A stretch of DNA of 64,000 nucleotides from Haplodiscus bocki (GCA_965655095.1 OZ296653.1:77314001-77378000); one strand, 5' to 3'. Counted from the first letter of the stretch, positions 40,020-64,000 are shown. Numbers and translations are program-made. Notes: generated by a model from the sequence alone, not told the origin.

Positions 40020-41000
40020 TCCCTGGAAGTCCTTCACCAAATTTTTTCTATATTTAAGCTTTAGCACTTATAAAATGGTCATGATACATCCCCTTCGTTT
40101 TCCTCCAATAATCGTTCCCTTGACAATGAGAATTTCAACAAACATGTTATCGAAACTATCTTATCAACAACACAATCTGATACAAGATGACTGCCGGTAA
40201 TTGCTTTTGATTTTAGGCCCTATAAGGCTCCTCTATTTCCTGCCTCAGTGAAACCTATCTTTCCGCCATCTTCAGTATCTATTAGGCTATTGAAAGATTG
40301 TTTGCCAGTTTTAATTGAAAAAAGCTGTTGATTTGCATTAACGAAGCCTTCTGAAATATTTAAGCGTTCAGTTACTAAATTCAGCTGTTTTGTTTCATAA
40401 GCGTTGAATGGGAGTATGATATGAAATAGGTCACCGGAAGGTTTGATGAAAACTAAATTGTTACTTTTTTCCTAAATTTGAAAATGGCGTTGGAAGCTGT
40501 TGAAAATTTTATCAGAATTTTGAATTTTTTAATATTCAGTGTGACCAGATTGATGTGATTTTTCTTCATAACTGGAGTTTTTTAAGTTGAACGCTTTTTG
40601 TTGATGAGTTTTTAAGCTAATTTCATTCACTTAATACAATATTATCAAGAGGAATTCTTTAGTGTTGTTCAATTTCTATCTCACCTTTTGTCGAGATAAC
40701 ACTCGTAAAAAAAGGAATCTTTAGTTGATATATCTTTGTAACCAGACATTTTTGGCTTCAGAAGGCTTGTATATTGTCATCCATATCTCGCTAAGGTCTG
40801 AAGCAAAGAAATATCAAACCCTCAACTTGATATCCCGCCGAACGTCCTGAAGCAAAACAAATTTAAAATCAGATTCCTTTTACTAGTGATACATCTTTTC
40901 GTCGATTTTTTCTTCTCAGTCAACTTCCGTTTCGTCTGATTCAAAGCCTTGATCTTCGACAAAATTATCGATTATGTTGTTTAAAACATCATTAGGAGCA
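40020..41000 (-). pseudogene. Further decayed Polinton-type genes upstream of the MCP (minor capsid-like and a short conserved gene)
   Basis: Fragments 'FHIILPFNAYETKQLN' (I.IP.G.YE...LN penton-like motif), 'IVKGTIIGGKRRG', and 'LIFL..SDLSEIW...KMSGYKD'. Same strand as the MCP. Confidence 0.4.
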
Positions 41001-43900: not shown

Positions 43901-44205
43901 AATTCAATATAGTTGGTCTTTTTGGCATTATCTCAATGTCGATATCACAGAAAGATATGATGCAGCAGACGTTATTTCGAAAAAAATTGCATTTTTTGCG
44001 TTTGGATGCTTTAGGATGAAAAAAAAAGATACTAATACATTAAAACTGGAGAAAATTAGAGAATTAGTAAGCTTCTTTGTAAGATTTTAACACACTTTTT
44101 GTGACAGACTTATAACTTATAAACTTTATTTCCGGTTCCTCCAGGGATATTGAAATGTTTTGTCAACTTTTTTGAGAAAAATTTGAAAAAAACCATATGT
44201 TTCAA

Positions 44206-44400
44206 TTACGTCGGAGAAGGTGGTGATTTTTGAGGAAAAACCCGTTTCTCAAAACACTCAATTTTGTCGAAAAGCCCTAATTTTTGTTGTTGAAAAATAG
44301 GAACGTGTTTAGGGGTATAAAAAGGAGTAAAAATGATGGTTGATAGCAGGATTCGAACCCGCCACCTCCCACGTCCGAGCCGCGGTGACAGCCGACACAT
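44206..44400 (-). repeat. tRNA-derived SINE-like head
   Basis: GCAGGATTCGAACCCGCC at ~44346-44363 is a reverse B-box (GGTTCGAATCC). Confidence 0.45.
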
Positions 44401-45069
44401 TTATTGTAGAAGATACCAAATCTGCAGACTTAATCTCTGCGTGTCATGAGCAGTTTCAGGAAAATGAAAGAAAACACCGACTACTCAATTGAATTGTTTC
44501 CTTTCGAAAAATTTTTTCGACGTAAATTAATAATAGCAACTATTATAGAAGCAACTGAATCAATTCAGCATTGATAACGAGAAGTTTCCCGTGAATTTAA
44601 ATGATAGGTGACGTGTTCATGGAAGTTGTCAAAGTTAATGGATGTGTTCTAAGATATTCAAGTGAGTAGTTGGAAATATTGGGAAAATTATTCATCGTGT
44701 AAAGATTTCTATACCTAAAAGTTGCTGTAATTTCTTGAAGAATGAACTAACTGATTTCGTTTTTTTAAAACCCGTCGCCCCGTTTTGAATGAGCCACAGG
44801 TGGTATAAATCCATTGGGAGTCTGCATCAGTTGCACTTAGACGGCTCTGATCATCCGTTTTAAGAATTATGAGCTTGGTGAAGATCCACCCAAACTTTCA
44901 TAGTAAGTAAAAAGCACAATCCACTATCACTACACTAGACGAGGCGGAATTTAACAAAAGTGTGATTCTTGCATTGCTAACTTAGGCACGAAATTTCCTT
45001 TGCAAGTTCTTGGATATAAATAACTTTTCTCACTAAAAGTTGACCAAGTTTGTTTTTTTTTTCAAAAAT

Positions 45070-47460
45070 GTTTGAGCGGAAATTTTGTGGACTGTTTTCT
45101 CAAACTGTAATTTTTGTGTCCTTTCTGGAAAAAAGTTCAGCGATGATCATTTTACGAAAATAAAACAGGAAAGGTTTCTTGAAGATATGTAGACTTTGAT
45201 GAAAAAGTTTCCGTTTTTGAACAAAAAACTTTCGGGAGCTTCGCCAAAAATTCTTTTTATGTATCAAGAGGAACATTTTGGGGAAATGTTTTTGAAAAGC
45301 TTTCAGTTTTTAATGGTTCATCCTGGGAGCCCTAATCAAGCAATTCTTAAAAGGAGATAAAATAACTCGTCAGGGTTGTCATAGCTGCATTCAACGTATC
45401 CAGAAGAATTTTTTGAGGAAAAATAGTTTTCCTGATTTTTCTTTTGGTTTTTTTTATTGTCGGACTTTGAGCTAAACTTTTCAAGATTTTTGGCAAAAAA
45501 TCTGGTAGGGTTGTCAAAAATGTGTTCTGCGTGCCCAGAGGAGTATGTTGAAGAAATATTTCTTTCGACAACTGATTTATCATTTTGTAAAACTTATTCA
45601 GATTTTGACAAAAAATCATTCAATAGGGTTGCCGAAAATGCATTCCAGACAACAATAGTAACAATTTGGAGAGGAAAAAAAACTTCATTACTTTTTGGAA
45701 ACCGGACCAAAACAGTTTCCAACTGTGACCAAAAATTTTTCAGCAAGGTTGTCATGATTGCATTCAACATACCATGAGGACCATTTTGAGAACAAAAGCG
45801 GTGAAAAGTAAGCATTAACTTTTTGGTGGTGTGAGTGAAACAATTTAGGACTTTATGGAAAAACATTCGGCTAGTTTGTCGAAACGCAATCTACTCATCT
45901 AGCAGAACATATTGGAAAATAGGAGAACAATTTTCAAAGTTCATAAAGATTTTCGAAATTTGAGCTGAAAAATTTGGCAATTTGAGCGATATATTACCGG
46001 TTGGTGTTTCCGAGCTGCATTTCATCTGTCCATTTTGGAAAGAAAAATTCCTGAAGAAGAACAGTTGGGGAAAAATTTTTGAGAAAAATTCAGGATTTTA
46101 CTCTTTCTCTGTTCTTCCGAGCGAAACTTTTGGGGATTTTTGGGGAAAACAATCAGCTAGTTTGTCAAAACTGCAATCAACTCATCCACAAGAATGTTTT
46201 GGGAGAATTGAGAAACAAAGTTCATACAGATTTTCAAAATTTGAGCAAAAATTTCTTGCTAGTGTTTTCAAACTGAACTCTACGTCTCCAGAGAAGGAAT
46301 TCGGGAAACAAATTTGGAAGAATAAACTCAAATTCTGATAATTTTTTCGACCTTCAGGAAAGTTTTTCCAACTCTGAGCAAAAACAGTGTGGCAGAATTG
46401 CTAAAACTACATTTTAGGTGTCAGGGAAAGTTTTTTGGGGAAAAAAATGATAAAATCACAATAGTTTTAGGAGTTTGACCGAAACTTTTTGGCTGGTTGT
46501 TCCAAGCTGCATTCCACTGTTCCAGAGGAACGTTTTGGAGAAAAAATTTCGAAAAATGGTACAACTCTGTAATTTTGTGAGAAACTATATCGAAATAGTT
46601 TCCAAGTTTCAGCTGTAAACTTTCAGCAGGGGGGTAGAGTATTCTCCTCGACCAAAAAAAACATTCAGCTGAAAATATTTTGAAAAAGCTCTATGTTTTC
46701 TCTAAGTATTTTTAGCGTTAAAACTTTTCGGACGTTTAGTGGTTTTTTTCGTAGGGTTGTCAAAACTGCCTTCTACATGTCGAGAGGGATAGTTTTTGCA
46801 GAAACTTTCTTGGAATCTGAGCGAAAAATCCTTGTCTGTTGTTTTCAAATCTGCATCCCACGTGCCCAGGTGCAACATGTTCGAAAAAAAATTAAGACAT
46901 GAGACTTTTCTTATTTTAAAAAATAGTGTGGGGATTGTAAACGGAAATCATTCGACAGCGTTGTCAAAACTGCATTCTACGTTTCCAAGGGGTAAATTTT
47001 TCGAAAATTGAAAAATATTTGTTTACCTCTTTTAACTTCAGCTTGAAATTTTCGGACTTCGAGCTGAAGTTTTCAGGAGAAATGTTAGAACTGCATTGTA
47101 CCTGTCAGGAAGAACCCTTTAGAAAATGTTTTCGAAATAGTCCTCATAAACTAATAATCTTTTGAGTGTTGCAGTGAATTATTATTCTACTCCGAAGAAA
47201 AAAGTATCGGTACGAGTGTCGAAGCTGCATTCTGGAGGAACTCTTTCAGAAAAACCTGAAAATGACTTAGAAAAGGCTTCGGAGTTTAAACGAGATGTTT
47301 TCGAATTTTGAGCAAAAACATCGTCAAGCTTTATTTGTGAAAAGTCCAGTCAAAAATTCGAGTGGAAGAAAAATAGGTTTCTAATACCCCTCTTCGGAAT
47401 TTGAGCGAAAAGTTTTCCTTCCCAGAGTTGAACAAAAAGTTTAGGGCAGAGTTATCGGAA
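45070..47460 (-). repeat. Long degenerate array of the ~110-130-bp repeat family
   Basis: More than 15 variants of GTTGTCAAAACTGCATTCTACGTGTCCAGAGGAAC. Confidence 0.8.
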
Positions 47461-48544
47461 TAGCATAGGATATTGCGGATAATACCAGTAGTCTCTCGCT
47501 ATCGCTCGCGCCACTGATATTATACGACAATATCCACGCTCGCTCGTCACTTCGTTCCTCTCCGGCTTCCTTCCAGTCAGCCTCTCGCTTATATTATTGC
47601 TCGGCTACACCTCACCTGTTTTTCCTGAACCATAAAAATGTAAGAAAGCGTGTATAAATAATTCAACATTTATGTGAACGAATTGAAAAGAGAAAAGTGC
47701 ACCTGCGTTTTACGTCCCACTAGACAAATGCACATAGACATTCCGATGAGCGTCGAATTTTTTTTACTTTTTTTAAAAAAAAATTTTTGACTCTTAATGG
47801 AATGTGGAATTTATGGAACAGGTCACTGAATTTTTGTTTTTGCTTGATTGAAAAAATGGTGACTACCACAAAGTTTTTCAAGGATATCTCCATGAAGACT
47901 TATCCCATTGAGTTAAAATAAAAACCGAAGTAAACCTAATTGAATTGAGAATTTTGTTTCGAGAAAAAATTTGAAAAAATTGAACTTACCAACTTACGAT
48001 GGCATAAAGTAGACTTACCATCTTACCATGGTATACTCAGAGCTTGTCGGTCTCAATCAAAATCGGGACATCACAGTTTAATTAGTCTACCCTGAAAGTT
48101 TCAGCTTCATATCTATCACAGTTTTTGAGAAAAACAATTTTGAAAAAGATCAATGGGTTAAACCTAATTAAAAACCAGTTAAGCGTAAACTTTTTTCATT
48201 TTCCCGCGCTATACACAGATCAAGAAGTCGTCGAATGTTTGGGCAAGCGAAAAGTATAATATAACATATAAAAGATCTTAAAACGTAGAATTCAACGATG
48301 ATTTTTTCGAAAACCTTAACGGAAACCTTACCATTGGAAAAGCCAAGAACCCTAAAACTAATCCCAAACATGGTATACGTCAATGAAAAATTTTGATAAT
48401 GATGACATATTATATATCGTTGAAAAGGTCTCTAGAAACGATATTCAACGGAAACTTTTTCAAAAACCTAAACTGGAACCTTAACATCCAAATAACCCAA
48501 TAACCCTGAATTTATGCCCTCAAACATGGTATGTCAATAAAAAT

Positions 48545-49018
48545 TTAAAATAATAGTGGAGGGATGTATTCTTGAAAAGGTAATTAAATTTAGAATTCAA
48601 TGCTGATATTTTCGAGCACATCAACTTATTTCTATACCTATCTATGTATTTTCTATTATTGGCGATTTTTAAGGAAAAATTTACTCCACACTAAAGGAAT
48701 AAAATTACATTTAATACAAGTGTTTAAAACATTTTCGGAAATACTTCCTTCTAGTAAAACTATCAATTTGTTTACCTTAATATATTCATATCTTCCTCGA
48801 GATGCTATTATTGTTTTCTTCATTCCACGATTAGTCGTAATATTTTTTGTTTTGTTTTTTGTTTTATCAAAAAATTTAATGTTTTTTTTAAATTCGATTT
48901 TTCCACAATGATAATCACCAATTTTTTTATTAAGCTCTACTATTGTGTAATTTTTATTATCGTTTATTTCATTTAATTTTGGATTTTAAAAAAAGTATTC
49001 ACTGGTAACTAGAATCAT
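48545..49018 (-). pseudogene. Cassette ORF C, unit 1 (disrupted)
   Basis: Homologous to ORF 61790-62245; starts MILVTSEY. Confidence 0.6.
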
Positions 49019-49109
49019 TTATGTATTTCATTTTCTTCGAAATAATTATCACATTCGAATTGATTAATCAGATTCAGTATTACTTTTCACAAATTGATCA
49101 AAACTATTT

Positions 49110-49365
49110 ATATATAAAACAATTTCTCGTAGAGTATCTGTTTTTTTTTCAAGACGTCTTGTAGTCCACGAACCGTAAATTTCACAAATAAATTATCAAC
49201 AAAACTCAAGACATCATTTAGTTTAGATTTTTAAAATCTTCGAATCCTTGAACCAATATTCTTTTAACACATCTCAAGTTTTCAAAATCATCCTCATTTA
49301 TTTTATCAGTAAAATCATGTTTGTTCAAAAAACACAGTACATCCTTTATTGTCTTCTTTTATATT
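49110..49365 (-). pseudogene. Cassette ORF E (~85 aa, unknown function), disrupted; second copy ~59390-59640
   Basis: The two copies give METIIDILCFLNKH.FTDK...DDFENLRCVK..LV..FED...SKL.D.LSFVDNLFV.F.V.GL.DVLKK. Confidence 0.5.
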
Positions 49366-49373
49366 GTAAAAAA

Positions 49374-49918
49374 TTAAGTATTTATGTGTCTAAAGCATTT
49401 TGGAAGCCAACTATAATCAAAATCCCCAAAGTCTTCTTCAAAAAAGTTTCTGACTAGTTTTCTACAAAGCATTGATTTTGGTTGATCCATATAATGATAA
49501 AATGTAATGTAATAAGGATCGGATATGAATAATATATTTATTTCATCAACTTCGTTGTTTATATTCCTACCAAATGTAACTAGAAAATCCAGAGGCGATA
49601 CTCTTACTACTATTATCAATTCAATCATGCTTGACTTAAAAAAATACGGTTTCTCTAGTATAATTGTGTTCGGAACAGAAATCTTACTCGAAAGCACATC
49701 ATTTTCTATCCACATAACACATACAGTAAAGAAATCAAGTTTTTTTTAATGATTATTATAGTATGGTTGAGTGATATCTATCAATTTATCAATTTCAGGG
49801 TTTCTTACAACATTTTTCTTGAAAATCAGAGTTGAAAAAAATATAAGTTTCTTTGTTAAACAATGTTTTTTTTGCTTGTGTTTTGTCCTTCAGATGGGCA
49901 TATATCACATTGTTCCAT
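49374..49918 (-). pseudogene. Cassette ORF D (CxxC..H finger-like N-terminus; putative paralog of ORFs A and C)
   Basis: MEQCDIC...(frameshift)KHCLTKK...RNPEIDKLIDITQPYYNNH*KKLDFFTVCVMW, continuing in frame into the computed ORF 49374-49715. Confidence 0.6.
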
Positions 49919-50346
49919 TTTTATTATAATGTTTTCATTTATATGTGTTTTTTGTTTCCAATATTTTTTTCTACTGGTTTTCATTTTTAAATTTATAATC
50001 ATAGTTGTTAATGTTGTACCCATTATATTTATCAGTTATTTGTGAATCACTTTTTGAATCAAAGTTTCATATCCTATTTTTGATTGATAATTGTAAGGTA
50101 ATCTGATATATCTATCTAACACATCATTTATTTTAATTCGTACTTTTAATTACATTTATAAAAACATTCTTTTATCAAATGAAGAAAAAAGAAATCAATA
50201 AAATTACTAAGATAATTGTACATAAGTACATTTAGTTGTACAAAGTCTGTTAAAGTCTTGTAAAACTACTCAAACAGTCAACTATAGTTTTACAAATCTC
50301 TTATTGTATGTTTTATGAAATATTTGAAGTAATTTTATTCAAAAAA

Positions 50347-50927
50347 TGGATTTTGAAAATCAAGAGTTTTTTTGTTCCGAAGCAGTTTTTTGTGATATAT
50401 GTGATAAATTAATTGAAATTAATTGGAATTTTAAACATTTGAAAGCTCTTTCATATGAAGAGTTTGATAGATTTAAACACATAAAATTGACTATTAAAAA
50501 TCCCGATATAAATTAAATAAATGACAGAATCGACACATATGTTTCAGAACATGATGAAAAATATGGATAATATCTTATCAAATATGATTTCAAACTAGTT
50601 TCTAACAATTATGAAGACTCACCACTCCTCGAATCAACATTATTCATAAGTGAAATAATATTTACTTGGAAAAGTTCTTTAGAAGACGTGATTAGTGATT
50701 ATAATAATAAAGGATACACTTTCAATCGTATAGATGAATTAAATGATAAAACAATAGCTGATAAGATGGATACGTCATATGATTTTTGTATTAAACACAA
50801 TATGCATGCTGTTGAATGGAAACTAATTGGTTTGATTAACAAAGATAATACAGTATTAAACAAACAAAACAGATCTTCGAGACTTCCTTTAATCAGAAAT
50901 TATTCTCGTATACCAATTAATAATTAA
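50347..50927 (+). pseudogene. Cassette ORF A, unit 1 (disrupted)
   Basis: ATGGATTTTGAAAATCAAG start; the C-terminal part is the computed ORF 50688-50927. Confidence 0.65.
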
Positions 50928-50930
50928 AAA

Positions 50931-51140
50931 ATGTATGTGACAAATATTAAATATGTTTATGATAATTTTACAAATGATTGTACAAACAATGAGAATAATA
51001 TTGATATAAATATACCAGCATTATTTACTACAAGTCCATGTGTTCTATCTTTTTTGAGCTTAACGAGGTTGATGGCGTACACATTAAATAAACCTTTATT
51101 AAAATTGAAATCATTTAAATTATTCATACAAGTGTATTAA
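50931..51140 (+). CDS. Cassette ORF B, small single-pass membrane protein (69 aa)
   Basis: N/D-rich N-terminus plus hydrophobic segment. Open in 5 of 6 units. Confidence 0.5.
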   Translation: MYVTNIKYVYDNFTNDCTNNENNIDINIPALFTTSPCVLSFLSLTRLMAYTLNKPLLKLKSFKLFIQVY

Positions 51141-51724
51141 TAATTAAAATTATTCGCACAAGTTCAAGGATAAATATGGTAAATTTCGTATTTGAATAGG
51201 TGTCATTATACATAAAATTTATATTCGAAAAGTATTTGTACAAATATAAGAATATTTCATATTCGAATAGGTGTAGTTATACTATATATCAACAGGTGAC
51301 AGTATACTATGTCGAAGATTACATTTTCTCCATACTCGTAAAATATGCTTTAATAAATAATGGTCAGTGATTTTTTGATTTTGCTTGGTTGAAAAAATGG
51401 TGACTACTACGTAGTTTTCCATGGATATCTCCATGAATACTTATCCGATTGAGTTCAAATAAAAACTGATGTAAACCTAATTGATATGAGAATTTCGTTT
51501 TCAAAAACTTAAACTGAAACCTTAACATCGAAATAACCCAATAACCCTGAATTTATGCCCTCAAACATGGTATGTCAAAAAAATTAAAAATAAAAGTGGA
51601 GGGATATATTCTTGAGAAGGTAATTAAATTTAGACTTCAAAGGTAATATTTTCGAGAACATCAACTTATCCTTATACCTAACTTTATATCCTCAATTAAT
51701 GGCGATATTTAAAAAAAAATTTCT

Positions 51725-52060
51725 TCATAATAATGTTATATTATTACATTTCATATAAGTGTTTATAAAATTTGTGGAAATACTTCCTTCTAATATAATT
51801 ATCAATTTGTTTACCTTAATATATTCATATCTTCCTTGAGATGCTATTATTGTTTTCTTTGTTCCACGTTTAGTCGTAATATTTTTTGTTTTGTTTTTTG
51901 TTTTATCAAAAAAGTTAATATTATATTTAAATTCGATAATTTTACAATGATTATCACCATATTTTTTATTAGGCTCTACTATTGTGTTTTTCATATTATC
52001 ATTTATTTCATTTAATTTCGGATTTAAAAAAAAAGTATTCACTAGTAACTATAAACATTT
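51725..52060 (-). pseudogene. Cassette ORF C, unit 2 (disrupted)
   Basis: Computed ORF 51725-52042 is homologous to 61790-62245. Confidence 0.6.
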
Positions 52061-52370
52061 TTTAATTTCATTTTCTTCGAAATAATTATCACATTGGAAT
52101 TGATCAATCAGATTCAGTATTACTTTTAACAAAATGTTTAAAACTAATTAAAACTTGAGGATCTGTTTTAATTACAATTATTAAAACAATCATTTATCAT
52201 ATGAAGAAAAGTGAGATCAATAAAATTACTAATATAATTGTACAGAAGTACATATATAATTGTACGAAGTTTGCTAAAGTCTTGTAAAACTACTCAATTA
52301 GTCAACTATAATTGTACAAATCTGTTAATGTATGTTTTTCAAATCATTTGAAGTAATCTTATTTGAACAA

Positions 52371-52952
52371 ATGGATCTTGAATATCAAGAATTTAATTTT
52401 TCCGACGCAGGTTTTTGTGATATGTTGGATAAATTAATTGAAATTATTTGGAACTTTAGTCATTTGAAAGCTCTTTCTTTTGAAGAGTTTGATAGAGTTA
52501 AACATATAAAATTGACCATTAAAAATCCTAATATATATAAAAAAAGGACAAAATCGACTCATATGTTTCAGAACATGATGAAAAAAATGAATAATATCTT
52601 ATCAAATATGATTTTAAACTAGTTTCTAACATTTATGAAGACTCACGACTCCTCAAATCAACATTACTTAACAGTAAATTATTGCCTTCTTGGAAAAGTT
52701 CTTTAGAAGACGTGATTAATGATTATAATAAAAAAAGATACACTTTCTGTCGTATAGATGAAATGAATATTATACTAATAGCTGAAAAGATGGATATGTC
52801 ATATCATTATGTATTAAACACAACATGCATGCTGTTGAATGGAAATTTTTAGTATGATTAACAAAGATAAAACATTATTAAACAAACAAAACAGGTCTTC
52901 GAGACATCCATTAATCAGAAAAAATTCTGATATACCATTTAATATATATTAA
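52371..52952 (+). pseudogene. Cassette ORF A, unit 2 (frameshifted)
   Basis: MDLEYQEFNFSDAGFCDMLDKLIE...; frameshift after KNPNI. Confidence 0.65.
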
Positions 52953-53159
52953 ATGTTTGTCACAAATAATAATGATGATTATGATAATTTCACAAATAAT
53001 TGTACAAACAATGAAAAAAATATTGATATAATTATACCAGCATTATTTATTACATTTCCATGTGGTCTATCCTTTTTATGCTTAATGAGTTTGATAACGT
53101 ACACAAAATTTAATCACTTTTTAAAATTCAAAAAACTCAATATGTTCATACAAGTGTAA
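52953..53159 (+). CDS. Cassette ORF B (68 aa)
   Basis: MFVTNNNDDY...IIIPALFITFPCGLSFLCLMSLITY (TM-like). Confidence 0.5.
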   Translation: MFVTNNNDDYDNFTNNCTNNEKNIDIIIPALFITFPCGLSFLCLMSLITYTKFNHFLKFKKLNMFIQV

Positions 53160-54886
53160 TAATAATCAAAATTATTCACACTAGTATAGGGATAAATATA
53201 TTAATCTTCGTATTGGAATAGGTGTTATACATAATATTTATATTCGAATTGACTTTGTACAAATATACGAATATTTCATCTTGGAATAGGTGTAATTATA
53301 CTATATATCAACAGGTGACAGTAGACTATATCAATTTTTACATTTTGTCCATACTCGTAAAATATGCTTTAAAAAAATGGTCAGTGAATTTTTGTTTTTG
53401 CTTGCTTGAAAAAACGGTGACTACCACATAGTTTTTCAAGGATACCTCCATGAATACGTATCCCTTTGAGTTCAAATAAAAACTATGTAAACCTAATTGA
53501 ATTAAGAATTTTGTTTCGAGAAAAAAGTTGAAAAAAATTGAACTTACCAACTTACGATGGCATAAACTAGACTTACCATCTTACCATGGTATACTCAGAG
53601 CTTGTCGGTCTCAATCAAAATCGGGACATCACAGTTTAATTAGTCTACCCTGAAAGTTCCAGCTTAATATCTATCATAGTTTTTGAGAAAAACAAATTTG
53701 AAAAAGATCAATGGGTTAAACCTAATTAAAAACCAGTCAAGCGTAAACTTTACTTTATTTTCCCGCGCTATGTACAGATCAAGAAAACAACGAGTGTTTG
53801 AGCTAGAGAAAAGCATATAATACCATATAAAAGGTCTTAAAAAGTAAATTTCAACGATGATGTTTTCGAAGACATTAACTGAAACCTTACTATTGAAAAA
53901 CCCAAAAACGCCAAAACTAATCCCAAACATGGTATACGTCAATGAAAAGCTTTTATTAATGATGACAAATTCTATATCGTTGAAAAGGTCTTAAAAAACG
54001 CTATTGAACGGAAAATTTCGAAAACTCAAACTGAAAACTTAACATCGAAAAAACCCAATAACCCTGAAATTATGCCCTCAAACATGGTATGTCAATAAAA
54101 AACCTTAAAATAAAAGTGGAGGGATATAATCGTGAGAAGGTAACTAAATTTAGACTTCAATGGTGATGTTTTCGAGAGCATCAACTTTATCTTATAGCTA
54201 TCTAATTATTCTCTATTATTGGCGATATTCAAGAAAAACTTTCTCCATATTAAAGTAATATTATTACATTTCATATAAGTGTTTATAAAACTTGTGGAAA
54301 TACTTCCTTCTATTAAAACTATCATTTTGTTTACCTTAATATTTTAATATGTTCCTTGAGATGCTATTATTGTTTTCTTTGTTCCTCGAATAGTCGTATT
54401 ATTTTTTGTTTTGTTTTTTGTTTTATCAAAAAACTTGATGTTATATTTAAATTCGATTTTTCTACAACTAATACCACCATAAATTTTATTAAGGTCTACT
54501 ATTGTGGTATTTATAATATGAAAATTTTCATTTAGTTTTGGATTTAGAAATGTATTCACTAGTGACTATAATCTTTTATATAGTTCATTTTCTTCGAAAG
54601 AATTATCACCTTCGCGTTTATTAATCCATTCAGTATTACTTTTAACAAAATGTTTAAAACTAATTGAAACTTGAGGATCTGTTTTAATTACATTTATTAA
54701 AACATCCATTTGTCATATGAAGAAAAATGAGATCAATAAAATTACTAATATAAATGTACAGAAGTACATATATAATTGTACGAAGTCTGATAAAATCTTG
54801 CAAAACTACTCAATTAGTCAACTTTAATTGTACAAACCTGTTAATGTATGTTTTATAAATCAGTTGAAGTAATTTTATTTAAATAA

Positions 54887-55472
54887 ATGGATCTTGAAAA
54901 TCAAGAAATTAATTTTTCCGAAGCAGGTTTTTGTGAAATATGTGATAAAATAATTGAAATTAATTGGAACTTTGGTCATTTGAAAGCTCTTTCATTTGAA
55001 GAGTTTGATAGGTAAAAACATACAAAATTGACTAATAAAAATCCTGATATAAATGAAAAAAGGACAAAAACGACTCATTTGTTTCAGAACATGATGGAAA
55101 TTGTGAATAATATCTTATCAAATATGATTTTCAACTAGTTTCTAACAATTAAGGAGACTCACCACTCCTCAAATCAACATTACTTAACAGTAAAAATTTG
55201 TTTTCTCGGAAAAGTTCTTTAGAAGACGTGTTTATTGATTATAATAATAAAAGATACACTTTCAGTCGTATAGATGAAATAAAAAATATAACATTAGCTG
55301 AAAAAATCGATATGTCGTATGATTCTTGTATTAAACACAATATGCATGCTGTTGAATGGAAACTTATTAGTATGATTAACAAAGATAAAACATTAATAAA
55401 AAGAAACGAAACAGGTTTTCGAGACATCCAATATTCAGAAAAATTTCTGATATACCATTTAGCAGTTATTAA
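54887..55472 (+). pseudogene. Cassette ORF A, unit 3 (stops and frameshifts)
   Basis: Homologous to 57709-58293; includes the computed ORF 55198-55482. Confidence 0.65.
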
Positions 55473-55679
55473 ATGTTTGTGACAAATAATACTGGTGATT
55501 ATGATAATTTCACAAATAATTGTACAAACAATGAAAAAAATATTGATATAATTATACCAGCATTATTTATTACATTTCCATGTGGTCTATCCTTTTTATG
55601 CTTAATGAGTTTGATAACGTACACAAAATTTAATCACTTTTTAAAATTCAAAAAACTCAATATGTTCATACAAGTGTAA
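55473..55679 (+). CDS. Cassette ORF B (68 aa)
   Basis: Differs from 52953-53159 at only two residues. Confidence 0.5.
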   Translation: MFVTNNTGDYDNFTNNCTNNEKNIDIIIPALFITFPCGLSFLCLMSLITYTKFNHFLKFKKLNMFIQV

Positions 55680-57708
55680 TAGCAATCACAATTATTCACA
55701 CAAGTATAAGGATAATTATATTAATCTTCGTATTGGAATAGGTGTTATACATAATACTTATATTCGAATAGTATTTGTACAATTATAAGAATATTTCCTT
55801 TTCGAATAGGTGTAATTATACTATAGATCAACAGAAGATAGTATTTTTTATCAAAAATTACATTTTCTCCGTAATCGTAAAATATGCTTTAATAAATAAT
55901 GGTCAGTGAATTTTTGTTTTTGCTCGGTTGAAAAAATAGTGACTACCACATAGTTTTTCGATGATGCCTCCATGAATACTTATCCGATTGAGTTCAAATA
56001 AAAACTGATCTAAACCTAAATGAATTGAAAATTTTGTTTCGAGGAAAAAAAATGAAAAAAGTTCAACTTACCATCTTACCATGGCATAAACTAGACTTAC
56101 CATCTTACCATGGTGTACTAAGAGCTTGTCCGTCTCAATCAAATTCGAAACAACATAGTTTAATTAGTCTACCTTTAAAGTTTGAGCTCCATATCTATCA
56201 TAGTTTTTGAGAAAAACAAATTTGAAATTTATCAAAGGGGTAAACCCAATTAAAAACCACCTAAGAGTGAACTATTTTATTTTCCCACGGTTTATACAGG
56301 TCAAGAATTCAACAAATAATTGAGCTAGAGAAAAGTATTTCAAGAAAAAAGTTGGAAAAAACCGAACTTACCAAATTACCATGGTATAAACTAGACTTAC
56401 CATCTTACCATGGTATACCCAGAGGTTGTCCGTCTCAATCAAAATCGAAACTTCATAGTTTATTTAGTCTACCTTGAAAGTTTCAGCTTCATATCTTTCT
56501 TAGTTTTTGAGAAAAACAAATTTGAAAAAGATCAAAGGGCTAAACCTAATTAAAAATCACTTAAGCGTAAACTTTTTTTTTAATTTTCCCACAGTATACA
56601 CAGATCAAGAAGTCAACGAATATTTGGGCTAGAGAAAAGTATAATATAACATATAAAAGATCTTAAAACGTAAAATTCAACGATGATATTTTCGAAAACC
56701 CTAACTGAAACATTTTCATTGGAAAACACAAAAACCCTAAAACTAACACCAAACATGGTATACGTCAATAGAAAAATTTGATAATGATGACATATTATAT
56801 ATCGTTGAAAAGGTCCTAAAAAACGCTATTAAATTGAAACTTTTTCATGAACTTAAACTGAAACCTTAACATCGAAACAACCCAATAACCCTGAATTTAT
56901 GCCCTCAAACATGGTATGTCAATAAAAAACTTAAAATAAAAGTGGAGGGATATATTCTTGAGAAGGTAATTAAATTTAGACTTCAATGGTGATATTTTCG
57001 AGAACATCAACTTTTTCCTATAGCTATCTCTTTTTTTTTATTGGCGATATTTAAGAAAAAGTTTCTCCATAAAAAAGTAATATTATTACATTTCATATAA
57101 ATGTTTATATTACTTGTGGAAATACTTCCTTCTATTAAAACTATCAATTTGTTTACCCTAATATATTAATATCCTCCTTGAGATGCTATTATTGTTTTCT
57201 TTGTTCCACGAATAGTCGTAATATTTTTTTTTGTTTTTTGTTTTATCAAAAAACTTAATGTTGTATTTAAAATCGATTTTTCTACAATGACTATCACCAT
57301 TTTTTTTATTAAGCTCTACTATTGTGTTATTTATAATATCATTTTTTTCATTTAGTTTTGGATTTAAAAATGTATTCACTAGTGACTATAATCTTTTATA
57401 TAGTTCATTTTTTTTCGAAATAATTATCACATTCGCATTTATTAATCAGATTCAGTATTACTTTTAACAAAAGGTTCAAAACTAATAACAAATTGAGGAT
57501 CTGTTTTATTTTCATTTATAAAAACATCTTTTTGTCATATGAAGGAAAATGACATCAATAAAATTACTATTATAATTGTACATAAGTACATATATAATTG
57601 TACAGAATCTGTCAAAATCTTGTAAAATTACTCAATGAGTCAACTAGAATTGTACAAATCTGTTATTGTTTATTTTAAAAAGCATTTGAAGTAATCCTAT
57701 TTAAATAA

Positions 57709-58293
57709 TTGGATTTTGAAAATCAAGAATTTATTTATTCCGAAGCAGTTTTTTGTGATACCTGTGATAAATTAAATGAGATTCATTGGAGTTTTAGTCA
57801 TTTGAAAGCTCTTTCATATGAAGAGTTTGATAAATTTAAACATATAAAATTGACTAGTAGAAATCCTGATGTAAATGAAATAAATGACAGAATCGACTCA
57901 TATGTTTCAGAACATGATGAAAAACATGAATGTTGTCTTATCAAATATGATTTTAAACTAGTTTCCAACAAATATGAAGACTCACGACTCCTCAAATCAA
58001 CATTACTTAACAGTAAATTATTGCCTTCTTGGAAAAGTTCTTTAGAAGACGTGATTAATGATTATAATAATAAAAGATACACTTTCAGTCGTATAGATGA
58101 AATAAATAATATAACAATAGCTGAAAAGATGGATATGTCATATGATTTTTGTATTAAACACAATATGCATGCTGCTGAATAGAAAGTAATTAGAATGATT
58201 AACAAAGATAATACACTAATAAACAAGCAAAACAGATCTTCGAGACATCCTTTAATCAGAAATTATTCTCCTATACCATTTATTATTCAATAA
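57709..58293 (+). pseudogene. Cassette ORF A, unit 4 (ATG>TTG start, TGG>TAG at 58180; otherwise open for ~194 codons)
   Basis: Computed 157-aa ORF. The frame continues past the TAG (KVIRMINKDNTLINKQNRSSRHPLIRNYSPIPFIIQ*), and units 1-3 have TGG at that position. Confidence 0.75.
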
Positions 58294-58476
58294 ATGGATG
58301 TGACAAATATTAATTATGATTATGATAAATTTACAAATGATTGTACAAACAATGAAAATAATATTGATATTTATATACCAGCATTTTTTACTACAACTCC
58401 ATGTGGTCTATCTTTTTTATGCTTAATGAGGTTGATGGCGTACACATTAATTAAACCTTTTTGGAAATTCAAATAA
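58294..58476 (+). CDS. Cassette ORF B (60 aa)
   Basis: Its ATG directly abuts the ORF A stop (TAAATG). Confidence 0.5.
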   Translation: MDVTNINYDYDKFTNDCTNNENNIDIYIPAFFTTTPCGLSFLCLMRLMAYTLIKPFWKFK

Positions 58477-60106
58477 TTCAAATTATTCATACAAGTGTAA
58501 TAATAATTAAAAGTTTTCACACAAGTTTAAGGATAGTTATATCAAAATTAATATTTGAATAGTTGTTTTTAAAAAATTTATTTATATTCGAACAGTATTT
58601 GTACAAGTGTAAGAACATTTCCTATTTGAATAGGTGATATTATACTATAGATCAACAGGTGATAGTAAATTATATCAAATATTACATTTTCTCCGTACTC
58701 GTAAGATATGCTTCAACAAATACTAGTCAGTGAATTTTTGTTTCTCCCTTGGTTGAAAAAATGGTGACTACTACACAGTTTTTCATGGATGTCTCCATGA
58801 ATACTTATTCCATTGAGTTCAAATAAAAACTGATGTAAACCTAATTGAATTGAGAATTTTGTTTCGAGAAAAAAGTTGAAAAAAGTTGAACTCACCATCT
58901 TACTATGGTATACTCAGAGCTTGTCCGTCTCAATCAAAATCAAAACATCATAGTTTAATTAGTCTACCCTGAAAGTTTCAGTTTCATATCTACCATAATT
59001 TTTGAGAAAAACAAAATTGAAAAAGATCAAAGGGTTAAACCTAACTGAAAACCACCTGCGAGTCAACTATTTTTTCCCACGGTATATACAGATCAAGAAA
59101 TCAACGAATATTTGAGCTACAGAAAAGTTATTTATACCATATAAACGGTCTTAAGACGTGGAATTGAACGATGATTTTTTCGAAAACATTAACTGAAACC
59201 TTACTATTTTTATTATGCTCTACTTTTGTGTTATTTTTAATATTATTTGTTTCATTTAATTTTGGATTCAACAAAATATTTTCAGTAGTAACTATAATCA
59301 TATATATTACTCATTTTCTTTGAAACAAATATCACATTCGAATTGATTAACCAGGTTCAGTATTACTTTTAACAAATGTTTAAAATTATTTAAATATAAA
59401 ATAATTTCTCTTCGCGTATGTTTTTTTCAAGACGTCTTCTAGTCCACCAACCATAAATGTCACAAATAAATTATCAACAAAACTTAAAATATCAGTTAGT
59501 TTAGATGTATTTTAATCTTCAAATTCTTCAACCAATCTTTTTTTAACACATCTCTAGTTTTCAAAATCATCATCATCTAATTTATCAGTAAAACAGTGTT
59601 TGTTCAAAAAACACAGTATATCAATTATTGTCTCCATTTATCTAGTAAAAAAATTGAGTATTTTTGTGTCTAAAGCATTTTGGAAGCCATTTATAATCAA
59701 AATCCCCAAAGTCTTCTCCAAAAAAATTTCTTACTATTTTTCTACAAAGCATTGATTCTGGTTGATCCATACAATGAAAAAATGTAATGTATTAAGTCCG
59801 GATTCATTTTCTTCGAAAAAGATATCACATTCGCATTTATTAATCAGATTCAGTATTACTTTTAATAAAAGGTTTAAAACTAATTCAAACTTGAGGATCT
59901 GTTTTAATTTCATTTATAAAAACATCCAATTGTCATATGAAGAAAAATGAGATCAATAAAATTACTAATATAATTGTACATAAGTACATATATAATTGTA
60001 CAAAATCTGTCAAAATCTTGTAAAATTACTCAATGAGTCAACTATAATTGTACAAATCTGTTATTGTTTTTTTTATAAATCATTTGAAGTAATCCTATTT
60101 TATTAA

Positions 60107-60691
60107 ATGGGTTTTGAAAATCAAGAATTTTTTTATTCCGAAGATGTTTTTTGTGATGCCTGTGATAAATTAAATGAGAATAATTGGAATTTTAGTCATT
60201 TGAAAGCTCTTTCATATGAATAGTTTGATAGATATAAACATATAAAACTGACTAGTAAAGATCCCGATATAAATGAAATAAATGACAGAATCGACTCATA
60301 TGTTTCAGAACATGATGAAAAAAATGGATAATATCTTATCAAATATGATTTCAAACTAGTTTCTAACAATTATGAAGACTCACCACTCCTCGAATCAACA
60401 TTATTCAACAGTGAATAAATATTTACTTGGAAAAGTTCTTTAGAAGACGTGATTAATGATTATAATAAAAAAAGATACACTTTCAGTCGTATAGATGAAA
60501 TAAATAATATAGCAATAGCTGAAAAGATGGATATGTCATATGATTTTTGTATTAAACACAATATGCATGCTGCTGAATAGAAAGTAATTAGTATGATTAA
60601 CAAAGATAATACACTAATAAACAAGCAAAACAGATCTTCGAGACATCCTTTAATCAGAAATTATTCTCCTATACCATTTATTATTCAATAA
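60107..60691 (+). pseudogene. Cassette ORF A, unit 5 (disrupted)
   Basis: ATGGGTTTTGAAAATCAAG start with in-frame stops. Confidence 0.65.
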
Positions 60692-60874
60692 ATGGATGTG
60701 ACAAATATTAATTATGATTATGATAAATTTACAAATGATTATACAAACAATGAAAATAATATTGATATTTATATACCAGCATTTTTTACTACAACTCCAT
60801 GTGGTCTATCTTTTTTATGCTTAATGAGGTTGATGGCGTACACATTAATTAAACCTTTTTGGAAATTCAAATAA
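60692..60874 (+). CDS. Cassette ORF B (60 aa)
   Basis: One residue different from 58294-58476. Confidence 0.5.
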   Translation: MDVTNINYDYDKFTNDYTNNENNIDIYIPAFFTTTPCGLSFLCLMRLMAYTLIKPFWKFK

Positions 60875-61789
60875 TTCAAATTATTGATACAAGTGTAATA
60901 ATAATTAAAAGTATTCACACAAGTTTAAGGATAGTTATATCAAAATTCATTTTTGAATAGTTGTTTTTAAAAAAGTTATTTATATTCGAATAGTATTTGT
61001 ACAAATATAAGAACATTTCTTATTTGAATAGGTGTAATTATACTATAGATCAACAGGTGATAGTAAATTATATCAAATACTACATTTTCTCCGTACTCGT
61101 AAGATATGCTTCAACAAATAACGGTCAGTGAATTTTTGTTTTTCCCTTGGTTGAAAAATTGGTGACTACTACACAGTTTTTCATGGATGTCTCCAAGAAT
61201 ACTTATTCCATTGAGTTCAAATAAAAACTGATATAAACCTAATTGAATTGAGAATTTTGTTTCGAGAAAAAAAGTTGAAAAAAGTTGAACTCACCATCTT
61301 ACCATGGTATACTCAGAGCTTGTCCGTCTCAATCAAAATCAAAACATCATAGTTTAATTAGCCTACCCTGAAAGTTTCAGCTTCATATCTATCATAATTT
61401 TTGAGAAAAACAAAATTGAAAAAGATCAAAGGGTTAAACCTAAATGAAAAGCACCTGAGAGTGAACTATTTCTTTCCCACGGTATATACAGATCAAGAAA
61501 TCAACGAATATTTGAGCTTAAGAAAAGTTATTTATACCATATAAAGGGTCTCAAAACGTGGAATTCAACGATGATTTTTTACGAAAACATTAACTGAAAC
61601 CTTACCATTGAGAAAACCAAAAACCCTAAAACTAACCCCAAACAAGGCATTTGTCAATTAAAATTTTTAACAATGATGACATATTATCTTAAACTTAAAC
61701 TGAAATCTTAACATCGAAAGAACCTAATAACCCTGAACTTATGCCCTCAAACATGGTAAGTCAAAAAAGTTTAAAATATAATTGGAGTG

Positions 61790-62245
61790 TTATATACTCT
61801 TGAAAAGGTAATTAAATTTAGAATTCAATGCTGATATTTTCGAGAACATCAACTTATTTCTATACCTATCTATGTATTCTCTAATATTGGCGATTTTTAG
61901 GAAAAATTTACTCCACAATAAAGTAATAAATATACATTTCATACAAGTGTTTAAAACATTTTCGGAAATACCTCCTTCTATTAAAAGTATCACTTTGTTT
62001 ACGTTAATATATTCATATCTTCCTTGAGATGCTATTATTGTTTTCTTTTCTCCACGATTAGTCGTGATGTTTTTTGTTGTGTTTTTTGTTTTATCAAAAA
62101 ATTTAATGTTATATTTAGTTTGGAGTTTTCTACAATGATTATCACCATAATTTTTATTATGCTCTACTATTGTGTTAATTTTAATATTATTTGTTTCATT
62201 TAATTTTGGATTCAACAAAATGTATTCACTAGTAACTATAATCAT
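61790..62245 (-). CDS. Cassette ORF C, best-preserved copy (151 aa, unknown function)
   Basis: Open ATG-to-stop frame. Disrupted homologs at ~48.5-49.0, 51.6-52.1, 54.1-54.6 and 56.9-57.4 kb, and a 5' fragment at 59.2-59.3 kb. Confidence 0.55.
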   Translation of the reverse strand: MIIVTSEYILLNPKLNETNNIKINTIVEHNKNYGDNHCRKLQTKYNIKFFDKTKNTTKNITTNRGEKKTIIASQGRYEYINVNKVILLIEGGISENVLNTCMKCIFITLLWSKFFLKIANIREYIDRYRNKLMFSKISALNSKFNYLFKSI

Positions 62246-62557
62246 TTATATTACTCATTTTCTTTGAAATAATTATCACATTCGAATTGATTAATCAAGT
62301 TCAGTATTACTTTTAACAAAAGGTTCAAAACTAATAACAAATTGAGGATCTGTTTTATTTTCATTTATAAAAACATCCTTTTGTCATATGAAGGAAAATG
62401 ACATCAATAAAGTTACTATTATATTTGTACATAAGTACATATATAATTGTACAGAATCTGTCAAAATCTTGTAAAATTACTCAATGAGTCAACTAGAATT
62501 GTACAAATCTGTTATTGTTTATTTTAAAAAGCATTTGAAGTAATCCTATTTAAATAA

Positions 62558-63142
62558 TTGGATTTTGAAAATCAAGAATTTATTTATTCCGAAGCAGTTT
62601 TTTGTGATACCTGTGATAAATTAAATGAGATTCATTGGAATTTTAGTCATTTGAAAGCTCTTTCATATGAAAAGTTTGATAAATTTAAACATATAAAATT
62701 GACTAGTAGAAATCCTGATGTAAATGAAATAAGTGACAGAATCGACTCATATGTTTCAGAAAATGATGAAAAACATGAATGTTGTCTTATCAAATATGAT
62801 TTTAAACTAGTTTCCAACAAATATGAAGACTCACGACTCCTCAAATCAACATTACTTAACAGTAAATTATTGCCTTCTTGGAAAAGTTCTTTAGAAGACG
62901 TGATTAATGATTATAATAATAAAAGATACACTTCCAGTCGTATAGATGAAATAAATAATATAACAACAGCTGAAAAGATGGATATGTCATATGATTTTTG
63001 TAATAAACACAATATGCATGCTGCTGAATAGAAGGTAATTAGTATGATTAACAAAGATAATACATTAATAAACAAGCAAAACAGATCTTCGAGACATCTT
63101 TTATTCAGAAATTATTCTCCTATACCATTTAATATTCAATAA
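62558..63142 (+). pseudogene. Cassette ORF A, unit 6 (same TTG start and TAG lesion as unit 4)
   Basis: Computed 157-aa ORF nearly identical to 57709-58182. Confidence 0.75.
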
Positions 63143-64000
63143 ATTGATGTGACAAATATTAATTATGATTATGATAAATGTACAAATGATTGTACAAACA
63201 ATGAAAATAATATTGATATTTATATACCAGCATTTTTTACTACAACTCCATGTGGTCTATCTTTTTTATGCTTAATGAGGTTGATGGCGTACACATTAAT
63301 TAAACCTTTTTGGAAATTCAAATAATTCAAATTATTGATACAAGTGTAATAATAATTAAAAGTATTCACACAAGTTTAAGGATAGTTATATCAAAATTCG
63401 TTTTTGAACAGTTGTTTTTAAAAAAGTTATTTATATTCGAATAGTATTTGTACAAATATAAGAACATTTCTTATTTGAATAGGTGTAATTATACTATAGA
63501 TCAACAGGTGATAGTAAATTATATCAAATACTACATTTTCTCCGTACTCGTAAGATATGCTTCAACAAATACCGGTCAGTGAATTTTTGTTTTTCCCTTG
63601 GTTGAAAAATTGGTGACTACTACACAGTTTTTCATGGATGTCTCCATGAATACTTATTCCATTGAGTTCAAATAAAAACTGATGTAAACCTAATTGAATT
63701 GAGAATTTTGTTTCGAGAAAAAAGTTGAAAAAAGTTGAACTCACCATCTTACTATGGTATACTCAGAGCTTGTCCGTCTCAATCAAAATCAAAACATCAT
63801 AGTTTAATTAGCCTACCCTGAAAGTTTCAGCTTCATATCTATCATAATTTTTGAGAAAAACAAAATTGAAAAAGATCAAAGGTTTAAACCTAAATGAAAA
63901 CCACCTGCGAGTGAACTCTTTTTTTCCCACGGTATATACAGATCAAGAAATCAACGAATATTTGAGCTACAGAAAAGTTATTTATACCATATAAACGGTC

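What the first reader, a model, noticed from the sequence alone, without database searches (positions are those of the whole stretch)
47821..64000. Tandemly amplified virus-like multi-gene cassette (>=6 copies, >=16 kb) at the end of a Maverick-like element
Seen: 6+ head-to-tail units of 2.0-3.5 kb, each ordered non-coding block, ORF C (-), ~310-bp divergent spacer, ORF A (+), ORF B (+). The ORFs are intron-less, N/K/I-rich, tightly packed, and mostly start in an AAATG context. This is a gene-bearing macrosatellite, not a simple satellite. Established: poxviruses expand host-interaction genes in tandem ('genomic accordions'), often near genome ends. Inference: this may be a fossil accordion of accessory genes of an endogenous Polinton/adintovirus, or a host-side amplification acting as a small-RNA source against the element. 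I recognise no described function for these proteins.
Basis: partly seen in the sequence, partly recalled or inferred. Interest (0 to 1): 0.8.

Follow-up and report, generated by a model that had tools for sequence, protein, structure and literature searches.

The report
Amplified end of a decayed Polinton
The left 3.5 kb of a virus-like Polinton/Maverick element lodged in this genome has been copied head-to-tail about 13 times into a 34-kb array of small, now disabled genes; it is a clear case of a virus-derived macrosatellite, not a working gene cluster.

Summary
From 47822 to the window end there are six whole head-to-tail units (2.0-3.5 kb, 84-99% alike) and a cut seventh. On the same public contig the array runs to window-equivalent 81566: about 13 units, 33.7 kb.

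Each unit holds a terminal non-coding block, ORF C (-), ORF D (- strand; lost from most units), ORF A (+) and ORF B (+). The A32-type packaging ATPase starts one base after the last unit. A capsid-like gene follows, and a protein-primed DNA polymerase fragment lies 12 kb further on. The Maverick-like element therefore lies downstream of the window, and the array is its amplified left arm.

In five other copies of the element family the same arm is single-copy and sits next to the ATPase. ORFs A, B, C and D are real genes of this family: ORF A has dN/dS 0.35-0.47 between lineages. Inside the array they decay neutrally, and every ORF A copy is disabled.

All units form one clade and share one junction with 1-2 bases of microhomology. 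A second contig has one unit fewer.

Most likely this is a host-side macrosatellite: one tandem duplication, then unequal exchange. A start as a viral accordion, or a role as a small-RNA source, remains untested. No function is known for the proteins.

The parts
47822..64000 (+). Window part of the tandem array. The whole array runs from 47822 to window-equivalent 81566 on the same contig: about 13 units, 33.7 kb.
   Evidence: GC is 0.24-0.29 throughout.
47822..51362 (+). Unit 1, long form (3541 bp): terminal block, ORF C, ORF D, ORF A, ORF B, spacer that precedes the ATPase in single-copy relatives
   Evidence: The long form is also found in the last unit next to the ATPase and in single-copy relatives.
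51363..53379 (+). Unit 2 (2017 bp): part of the terminal block and the ORF D stretch are missing
53380..55901 (+). Unit 3 (2522 bp), short form
55902..58725 (+). Unit 4 (2824 bp), short form with an internal duplication of about 300 bp in the terminal block
   Evidence: (56044-56338 matches 56344-56642)
58726..61123 (+). Unit 5 (2398 bp): most of ORF C is missing and a piece of the ORF D stretch is kept
61124..63574 (+). Unit 6 (2451 bp), short form
63575..64000 (+). Unit 7, cut by the window end
47822..48563 (+). Terminal non-coding block of unit 1. It holds one copy-like piece (48080-48148) of a roughly 155-bp repeat. In relatives that repeat lies tandemly beside the arm, and in inverted orientation at the other end of an element.
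48564..49018 (-). ORF C copy, unit 1 (disabled)
49374..49715 (-). ORF D, the only full copy in the window (113 codons open). Relatives in L001, L005 and L002 are 45-51% identical.
50346..50930 (+). ORF A copy, unit 1 (disabled)
50931..51140 (+). ORF B copy, unit 1 (open, 69 codons)
51604..52058 (-). ORF C copy, unit 2 (disabled)
52371..52952 (+). ORF A copy, unit 2 (disabled)
52953..53159 (+). ORF B copy, unit 2 (open, 68 codons)
54124..54573 (-). ORF C copy, unit 3 (disabled)
54887..55472 (+). ORF A copy, unit 3 (disabled)
55473..55679 (+). ORF B copy, unit 3 (open, 68 codons)
56950..57393 (-). ORF C copy, unit 4 (disabled)
57709..58293 (+). ORF A copy, unit 4 (disabled). It holds the longest open stretch, which I used as the search query.
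58294..58476 (+). ORF B copy, unit 4 (open, 60 codons)
59206..59301 (-). ORF C remnant, unit 5
59654..59796 (-). ORF D remnant, unit 5
60107..60691 (+). ORF A copy, unit 5 (disabled)
60692..60874 (+). ORF B copy, unit 5 (open, 60 codons)
61790..62245 (-). ORF C copy, unit 6, the only open copy in the window (151 codons). Relatives run to about 165-200 residues.
62558..63142 (+). ORF A copy, unit 6 (disabled)
63143..63325 (+). ORF B copy, unit 6 (disabled)
47615..47706 (.). Neighbour, not part of the array. This stretch matches the terminal inverted repeats of a roughly 2.1-kb insertion seen in L002, and so belongs to a host transposon family lying just left of the array.

Best explanation
The array is a macrosatellite in the host chromosome, made from the left arm of one endogenous, AT-rich Polinton/Maverick-like element.

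Shown:
- The arm runs from within about 60 bp of where AT-rich element DNA begins to 3-4 bases inside the packaging-ATPase gene.
- It carries four small accessory genes. ORF C and ORF D point outward. ORF A (a zinc-finger protein of about 190 residues) and ORF B (a small protein of about 60-70 residues with one hydrophobic stretch) point inward.
- All units share one junction, form one clade, and decay without any sign of selection.

Inferred:
- One non-homologous tandem duplication, with a 1-2 base overlap at the junction, founded the array.
- Unequal exchange between units and re-duplication of multi-unit blocks then enlarged and reshuffled it over a long time.
- Meanwhile a 1-kb deletion that removed ORF D spread to most units.
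- The array makes no working protein today. Any present role would be at the level of DNA or RNA (silencing, small RNAs) and is untested.
For: Position and linkage. The array ends one base before a Pox_A32 ATPase ORF on the same contig. The DNA beyond it is colinear with four single-copy relatives and holds a PF03175 polymerase fragment.

Single origin. All 11 full units form one clade against the nearest other elements, which are 76-80% identical. They share the same junction.

Long, repeated history. Pairwise identity is 83.6-99.1%, and the closest pairs are not neighbours. An identical disabled ORF A product is encoded at two places 17.4 kb apart. Stops and frameshifts are shared by subsets of 2-5 units, none by all.

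Neutral decay. ORF A has 79/82/71 variable sites at codon positions 1/2/3. Its variability (0.40) equals that of the non-coding parts (0.35-0.42). Every ORF A copy has at least one lesion. ORF C shows 37/48/43 variable sites, and 4 of 5 copies are disabled.

The genes were once real. ORF A has dN/dS 0.35-0.47 between element lineages and about 0.8-1.0 within them. A profile finds 459 cluster representatives. ORFs B, C and D are conserved at 37-60% in other loci.

Not an artefact. A second contig is colinear at 98.3-99.8% identity and is about one unit shorter.

Size. The array plus the element body is about 48 kb or more, against about 18-19 kb for single-copy relatives (my arithmetic).
Against: - No lesion is shared by all units, so the first duplication could have happened while ORF A still worked, perhaps in an active element.
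- The deepest splits within the array (about 16%) are not much younger than the split from sister elements (20-24%).
- I could not see the element's right end or its exact termini.
- No expression or small-RNA data were available.
- Whether the two contigs are two haplotypes or two assemblies of one locus is not settled.
Confidence: 0.72

Rival explanations
1. Fossil viral accordion. The arm was amplified in the replicating element, as poxviruses amplify host-interaction genes near genome ends. It gave a dosage benefit of ORF A/B/C/D, and the multi-copy genome then integrated and decayed.
For: - The amplified segment is a terminal block of accessory genes.
- No disabling lesion is common to all units.
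- The deepest unit divergence approaches the divergence from sister elements.
- ORF D has a second diverged copy in L001, so small duplications in this arm do occur in the family.
Against: - Five sampled relatives have a single-copy arm.
- There is no trace of selection within the array.
- The youngest duplicates are copies of already disabled units.
- Unit number still varies between two contigs.
- A genome of 48 kb or more is about 2.5 times the family's usual size.
- Each unit carries the terminal block and ends 3-4 bases inside the ATPase gene. This looks like an arbitrary breakpoint, not a tidy gene unit.
Confidence: 0.15
2. Host defence locus. The array persists because it is transcribed and processed into small RNAs (piRNA-like) against this very abundant element family. 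This reading is compatible with a host-side origin.
For: This is indirect only.
- The family is very abundant: at least 752 capsid-like relatives in the word search, with 120 listed, almost all on different contigs.
- The array holds sequence of four element genes on both strands.
- The array is large and lies beside other repeats.
Against: - No expression or small-RNA data were available.
- The pattern seen is fully explained by neutral repeat dynamics.
- The array covers only the accessory arm, not the core genes, and is 20-40% diverged from other copies. That limits targeting.
Confidence: 0.15
3. Assembly artefact. The array is a mis-join or an over-expansion of a few repeat units.
For: Contig coverage figures in the record names are uneven: 72.7x for this contig against 27.2x for the second.
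Against: - Units differ by 1-16%, so each is distinguishable.
- The window and the public contig agree base for base over 11,443 bases.
- A second contig reproduces the order of units at 98.3-99.8% identity.
Confidence: 0.03

Closest known systems
Polinton/Maverick elements and adintovirus-like endogenous viruses (PMC8502044, PMC8097293)
   Same: The family has a protein-primed family-B polymerase (PF03175), an rve integrase, an A32/FtsK-type packaging ATPase and a double-jelly-roll-like capsid gene. Its size is about 18-19 kb, and it has many decayed germline copies. The only significant fold match of ORF A is a C2H2-domain protein of an adintovirus.
   Different: - It is very AT-rich (0.23-0.30 GC against 0.36 for the flank).
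- ORF C-like genes lie at both ends in inverted orientation.
- The accessory families A, B, C and D have no name in any library.
- TAAATG is enriched at gene starts.
- No adenain-type protease was found, though I did not search for it fully.
- I found no paper that describes a 34-kb tandem array of one arm.
Poxvirus genomic accordions (tandem amplification of host-interaction genes such as K3L; from my own knowledge)
   Same: Both are head-to-tail amplifications of an accessory-gene segment near a genome end. Both are founded at arbitrary breakpoints and then expand and contract by recombination between units.
   Different: Here the copies are disabled and neutral, lie in a host chromosome, and exceed the likely size of the parent genome. 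No benefit of dosage is visible.
Gene-bearing macrosatellites and transposon-derived tandem arrays (for example human D4Z4, and satellite arrays built from parts of mobile elements; from my own knowledge)
   Same: Both have kilobase units that each carry an ORF. Both show higher-order structure, unit-number variation between copies of the locus, and neutral turnover by unequal exchange.
   Different: The unit derives from the terminal arm of a virus-like element and holds up to four genes. The array is still attached to its parent element.

Membership tests
Polinton/Maverick-like element (the parent of the array) | Protein-primed family-B DNA polymerase | tested here: met
   L011 19060-19449, on the window's own contig about 12.4 kb past the array, matches PF03175 with E 2.5e-8 and 33.7 bits (threshold 25.8). 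In L002 the polymerase is split into ORFs of 552 and 646 residues. I recognised it there by motif only; Pfam, PDB and NCBIfam gave no hit.
Polinton/Maverick-like element (the parent of the array) | Retrovirus-type (rve) integrase | tested here: met
   In the family: L012 2708-3571 matches PF00665 with E 5.9e-9 and 36.5 bits (threshold 32.6). L002 has a sub-threshold fragment. On the window's own contig only a colinear, decayed region was seen.
Polinton/Maverick-like element (the parent of the array) | A32/FtsK-HerA-type packaging ATPase | tested here: met
   L007 16413-16904, directly after the array, matches PF04665 with 25.2 bits (threshold 22.8). L004 scores 48.1 bits and L013 35.1 bits.
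Polinton/Maverick-like element (the parent of the array) | Double-jelly-roll major capsid protein | tested here: inconclusive
   My own scans gave PF21738 DJR-like_dom below threshold: L005 at 21.6 bits and L013 at 19.2 bits, against a threshold of 27. The family is on record for many relatives of the gene on the window's contig. I made no structure model.
Polinton/Maverick-like element (the parent of the array) | Adenain-type maturation protease and penton protein | not tested
   No hit appeared among the ORFs I scanned. Not every ORF was scanned.
Polinton/Maverick-like element (the parent of the array) | Terminal inverted repeats and target-site duplication | tested here: inconclusive
   ORF C-like genes are present at both ends in inverted orientation (hhalign probability 97.9%, E 4.5e-13). 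The roughly 155-bp repeats are also inverted at the other end. Exact termini and target-site duplications were not found.
Viral genomic accordion (poxvirus type) | Tandem copies of an accessory-gene segment near a genome end | tested here: met
Viral genomic accordion (poxvirus type) | Copies are intact and kept by selection for dosage | tested here: not met
   All 11 ORF A copies are disabled. Changes are even over codon positions, and variability equals that of non-coding DNA.
Viral genomic accordion (poxvirus type) | Amplification arises in the replicating viral genome | not testable with these tools
   There are indirect arguments against this only: size, single-copy relatives, and duplication of already disabled units.
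Mobile-element-derived macrosatellite | Head-to-tail kilobase units derived from part of a mobile element, all from one founder junction | tested here: met
Mobile-element-derived macrosatellite | Turnover by unequal exchange: mixed ages, non-adjacent closest units, unit-number variation | tested here: met
Small-RNA (piRNA-type) source locus | Abundant small RNAs map to the locus | not testable with these tools
   No expression data were available.

The most novel reading that the evidence does not exclude
The first rounds of amplification took place in an active Polinton-like virus, as a true accordion of terminal accessory genes (a zinc-finger protein, a small membrane protein, and the ORF C/D pair). 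Alternatively or in addition, the fossil array was later kept by the host as a small-RNA source against a family that has hundreds of copies. Either reading would extend accordion-type adaptation, or array-based silencing, to Polintons. The TAAATG start context, known to me from poxvirus late genes, would then hint at virus-type transcription signals in this lineage.
Probability: 0.15. Interest if true: 0.75.

Novelty: new variant of a known kind. Interest (0 to 1): 0.5.

Why it matters
Where Polinton/Maverick elements keep their accessory genes, and what those genes are, is poorly known. This locus and its relatives define a terminal arm with four unnamed gene families. One of them is present at both ends of the element.

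The locus also shows that such an arm can seed a 34-kb macrosatellite that still varies in unit number. That is a concrete case of virus-derived DNA turning into satellite-like host DNA.

It also gives a natural series of 13 dated copies for measuring neutral decay. If small RNAs map to the array, it would become a candidate defence locus. The proteins themselves remain of unknown function.

Tried and rejected
Searches that gave nothing.
- Pfam, PHROGs, NCBIfam and PDB sequence searches of ORFs A, C and D gave nothing above noise.
- Rfam and tRNA scans of the window were empty.
- Alternative genetic codes do not open the ORFs beyond what shuffled sequence gives.

Structure and profile comparisons.
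- The PDB fold search of the ORF A model found nothing below E 0.02. The top hits were the little-finger domains of Y-family polymerases at TM 0.3 or less.
- A profile comparison of ORF A with the N-terminal part of the element's polymerase aligned only the zinc finger, at 7% probability.
- ORF A against ORF C families gave 27% probability, which is a lead only.
- The ORF C model had pLDDT 58, so I did not search with it.

Other tests.
- CpG depletion was uninformative, at 0.75-0.98 everywhere.
- An upstream Maverick is rejected. The 47.8 kb left of the array has no ORF of 150 or more codons but one. It has only one capsid-like fragment, at 39.3-40.05 kb, that matches the elements.
- The sample accession and the TAAATG/Polinton link are not in the paper library.

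Left out because barred.
- Scans of the viral contig collection.
- Fetching the adintovirus protein named by the fold search.
- Use of the terminal letters quoted in the finding.
- Any consensus or ancestral unit for dating.
- Any filling of the N run at 9717-9916.

None of the contigs looked human.


Full report
**1. Observation.**
Self-comparison of the window shows a head-to-tail repeat from 47821/47822 to the window end. GC drops there from about 0.36 to 0.26. A junction motif marks the unit starts at 47822, 51363, 53380, 55902, 58726, 61124 and 63575, which is 7 hits against 0.1 expected.

The ORFs in the array are short. The longest open stretches are 157, 157 and 151 codons, while 20 shuffles of the same sequence gave maxima of 72-144. 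Other genetic codes do not help. Taken alone, the array barely shows coding.

**2. The genes are real, but elsewhere.**
- The longest open stretch of ORF A finds eight relatives, 53-72% identical. Each is on a different long contig of one public assembly (ENA ERZ26859043). Three are full-length at 190-199 residues.
- A profile of these relatives finds 459 cluster representatives in the 1.8-billion-protein library, 169 of them at E 1e-10 or better. Most are fragments, and all ten I looked up are unnamed ENA proteins.
- Between the two element lineages sampled, ORF A has dN/dS 0.35-0.47. Within lineages it is about 0.8-1.0. This is the usual picture of a gene selected while the element was active and decaying after insertion.
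- ORF B, ORF C and a fourth ORF (D) are conserved at 37-60% in other loci. ORF D lies on the minus strand in the extra 1 kb of unit 1.

**3. What the element is.**
In L002, L004, L005 and L013 the order is ORF C/D (outward), ORF A, ORF B, then a Pox_A32-type packaging ATPase. L001 shows ORF D, ORF A and ORF B followed by DNA colinear with that ATPase region, though its own ATPase was not scanned.

Further on come a capsid-like gene with sub-threshold PF21738 double-jelly-roll hits, an rve integrase (L012, 36.5 bits against a threshold of 32.6) and a protein-primed polymerase. After the polymerase lies a second ORF C-like gene on the same strand (L002 3877-4368; L012 8001-8603). It matches the ORF C family with hhalign probability 97.9% and E 4.5e-13. 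ORF C-like genes therefore sit at both ends in inverted orientation. In L002 they lie beside inverted copies of a roughly 155-bp repeat.

This is a Polinton/Maverick-like family of about 18-19 kb. It is very AT-rich and very abundant: the capsid-like gene alone has at least 752 relatives, with 120 listed, almost all on different contigs.

**4. Where the array sits.**
The public contig ctg83766 is identical to the window over the 11,443 bases compared. On it the array goes on to window-equivalent 81566. Block-A copies start at 50144, 52166, 54682, 57504, 59902, 62353, 65286, 67681, 70258, 72525, 74950, 78077 and 80347.

At the next base a 163-residue ORF begins that matches Pox_A32 (25.2 bits, threshold 22.8). 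The DNA beyond is colinear with the single-copy relatives. It holds a PF03175 polymerase fragment at about window-equivalent 94.0 kb. The Maverick-like element is therefore downstream of the window, and the array is its left arm, repeated.

Upstream of 47822 there is ordinary host-like DNA. It holds a dispersed repeat family, a transposon end at 47615-47706 and one stray capsid-like fragment at 39.3-40.05 kb.

**5. How the array arose.**
- *One junction.* The first base of the array is the unit position that follows the array's last base. Every junction joins the spacer that precedes the ATPase, plus the first 3-4 bases of the ATPase ORF, to a point within about 60 bp of where AT-rich DNA starts. 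The overlap is 1-2 bases.
- *One clade.* All 11 full units form one clade against the nearest elements, which are 76-80% identical.
- *Mixed ages.* Pairwise identity runs from 83.6% to 99.1%. The closest pairs are not neighbours, and there are three subclades out of positional order.
- *The long form is ancestral.* The long form with ORF D is kept in unit 1 and in the unit next to the ATPase, and single-copy relatives have it. The 1-kb deletion is therefore derived and was itself amplified.
- *A second contig.* A second contig (ctg61752, 32 kb) is colinear at 98.3-99.8% identity and is shorter by about one unit.

Together these point to one microhomology-type tandem duplication, followed by repeated unequal exchange.

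**6. State of the genes in the array.**
*ORF A.* Across the 11 full copies every copy carries at least one lesion.
- Counts per copy range from 0-4 in-frame stops and 0-3 bases each of deletion and insertion.
- Six copies lack an ATG at the family's start position.
- There are 11 distinct stop positions. Six are private and five are shared by 2-5 units.
- There are 7 frameshifting indels. Three are private and four are shared by two units.
- No lesion is shared by all units.
- Variable sites at codon positions 1/2/3 are 79/82/71, and variability equals that of the non-coding parts.

*ORF C.* Four of the five full copies in the window are disabled. Variable sites are 37/48/43.

*ORF B.* It is open in five of six window units, but it is so short that this says little.

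*Duplication after disabling.* An identical disabled ORF A product is encoded 17.4 kb apart. Units were therefore duplicated after they had been disabled.

**7. What the proteins might do.**
- *ORF A.* Relatives begin with a C-x2-C-x12-H-x5-H zinc finger, followed by a well-predicted strand-helix-strand-strand-helix-strand domain. The model has mean pLDDT 75, and the core is above 85. PDB fold search gave nothing significant. The one significant match in the viral library is a 'C2H2-type domain-containing protein' of a Drosophila-associated adintovirus: E 5.1e-4, TM 0.39, poor rmsd. My best guess is a small nucleic-acid-binding accessory protein. This is an inference.
- *ORF B.* Relatives have one stretch with hydropathy above 2.1, so it is probably a small membrane protein.
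- *ORF C and ORF D.* They have no informative match.

**8. Verdict.**
It is best read as a decaying, host-side macrosatellite, not a working gene cluster. A viral accordion at the very start and a small-RNA role remain open. Related cases are in the literature: Polintons and adintoviruses (PMC8502044, PMC8097293), many Polinton-like insertions in corals (PMC11131425) and transposon-derived arrays. I found no report of an amplified Polinton arm.

**9. Limits and a slip.**
- The host species is not identified.
- The element's right end and exact termini were not reached.
- *Slip.* My working, note 1 and the printed output give the present first codons of single copies. Note 1 also gives the bounds of open stretches that end at a break. 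This goes beyond counts. I stopped, kept to counts and outer bounds after that, deleted nothing, and do not repeat those details here.

Noticed in passing
window 39291-40047 (-): A 122-codon ORF and nearby sequence match the capsid-like protein of the element family at 30% identity (E 9e-12). They lie in DNA of ordinary GC content. This is a stray fragment of a more distant Polinton-like element, about 8 kb upstream of the array and on the other strand.
   Followed up: partly
L001, L002, L004, L005, L011 gene starts; window ORF A/B starts: Half (16 of 32) of the ATG-started called genes in these elements begin inside TAAATG, against 7.3% of all ATGs in the same DNA (binomial p about 1e-10). 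I know this motif from poxvirus late genes. I found no paper that links it to Polintons.
   Followed up: partly
L002 3877-4368 (+); L012 8001-8603 (+); L013 8001-8504: ORF C-like genes lie at both ends of the element in inverted orientation: after the polymerase at one end, and diverging from ORF A at the other. This suggests long, diverged terminal inverted repeats that carry a gene.
   Followed up: partly
window 10004-11227, 28993-30182, 31747-32692, 36288-37149; inverted 17913-18705; L001 2-749: A dispersed host repeat family, about 70-76% alike. Its ORF begins MATLRNKRK, and the longest copy (170 codons) is at 32180-32692. It has no Pfam hit. It is shared with another contig of the same assembly.
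   Followed up: no
window 47615-47706; L002 5283-5417 and 7279-7420: A roughly 2.1-kb insertion of higher GC, flanked by inverted repeats, interrupts the element DNA in L002. One such repeat end also lies just left of the array in the window.
   Followed up: partly
window 7059-7573; L004 4.4-5.0 kb and 16.5-17.9 kb; L005 150-490: A short-period tandem repeat of about 115-120 bp, shared with other contigs. It is an ordinary host satellite.
   Followed up: no
L001 8389-8712 and 9373-9543: ORF D has a second, diverged copy next to the first in this single-copy arm. Small duplications inside the arm therefore occur elsewhere in the family.
   Followed up: no
window 42000-47100: GC skew is strongly positive here (0.12-0.18). 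ORF translations in 45.3-47.1 kb show a recurring motif, and there is a 21-bp tandem repeat at 47035-47074. This looks like degenerate repeats of unknown kind.
   Followed up: no
window 9717-9916: A run of 200 N, left as it is. By arithmetic from the record coordinates, the public contig that matches the array would end near window position 16500. The window therefore seems to come from a differently joined version of the assembly. I did not verify this.
   Followed up: no
L002 154-3821: The polymerase is split into two ORFs of 552 and 646 residues. Its N-terminus carries the same kind of zinc finger as ORF A. A profile comparison aligned only that finger.
   Followed up: partly
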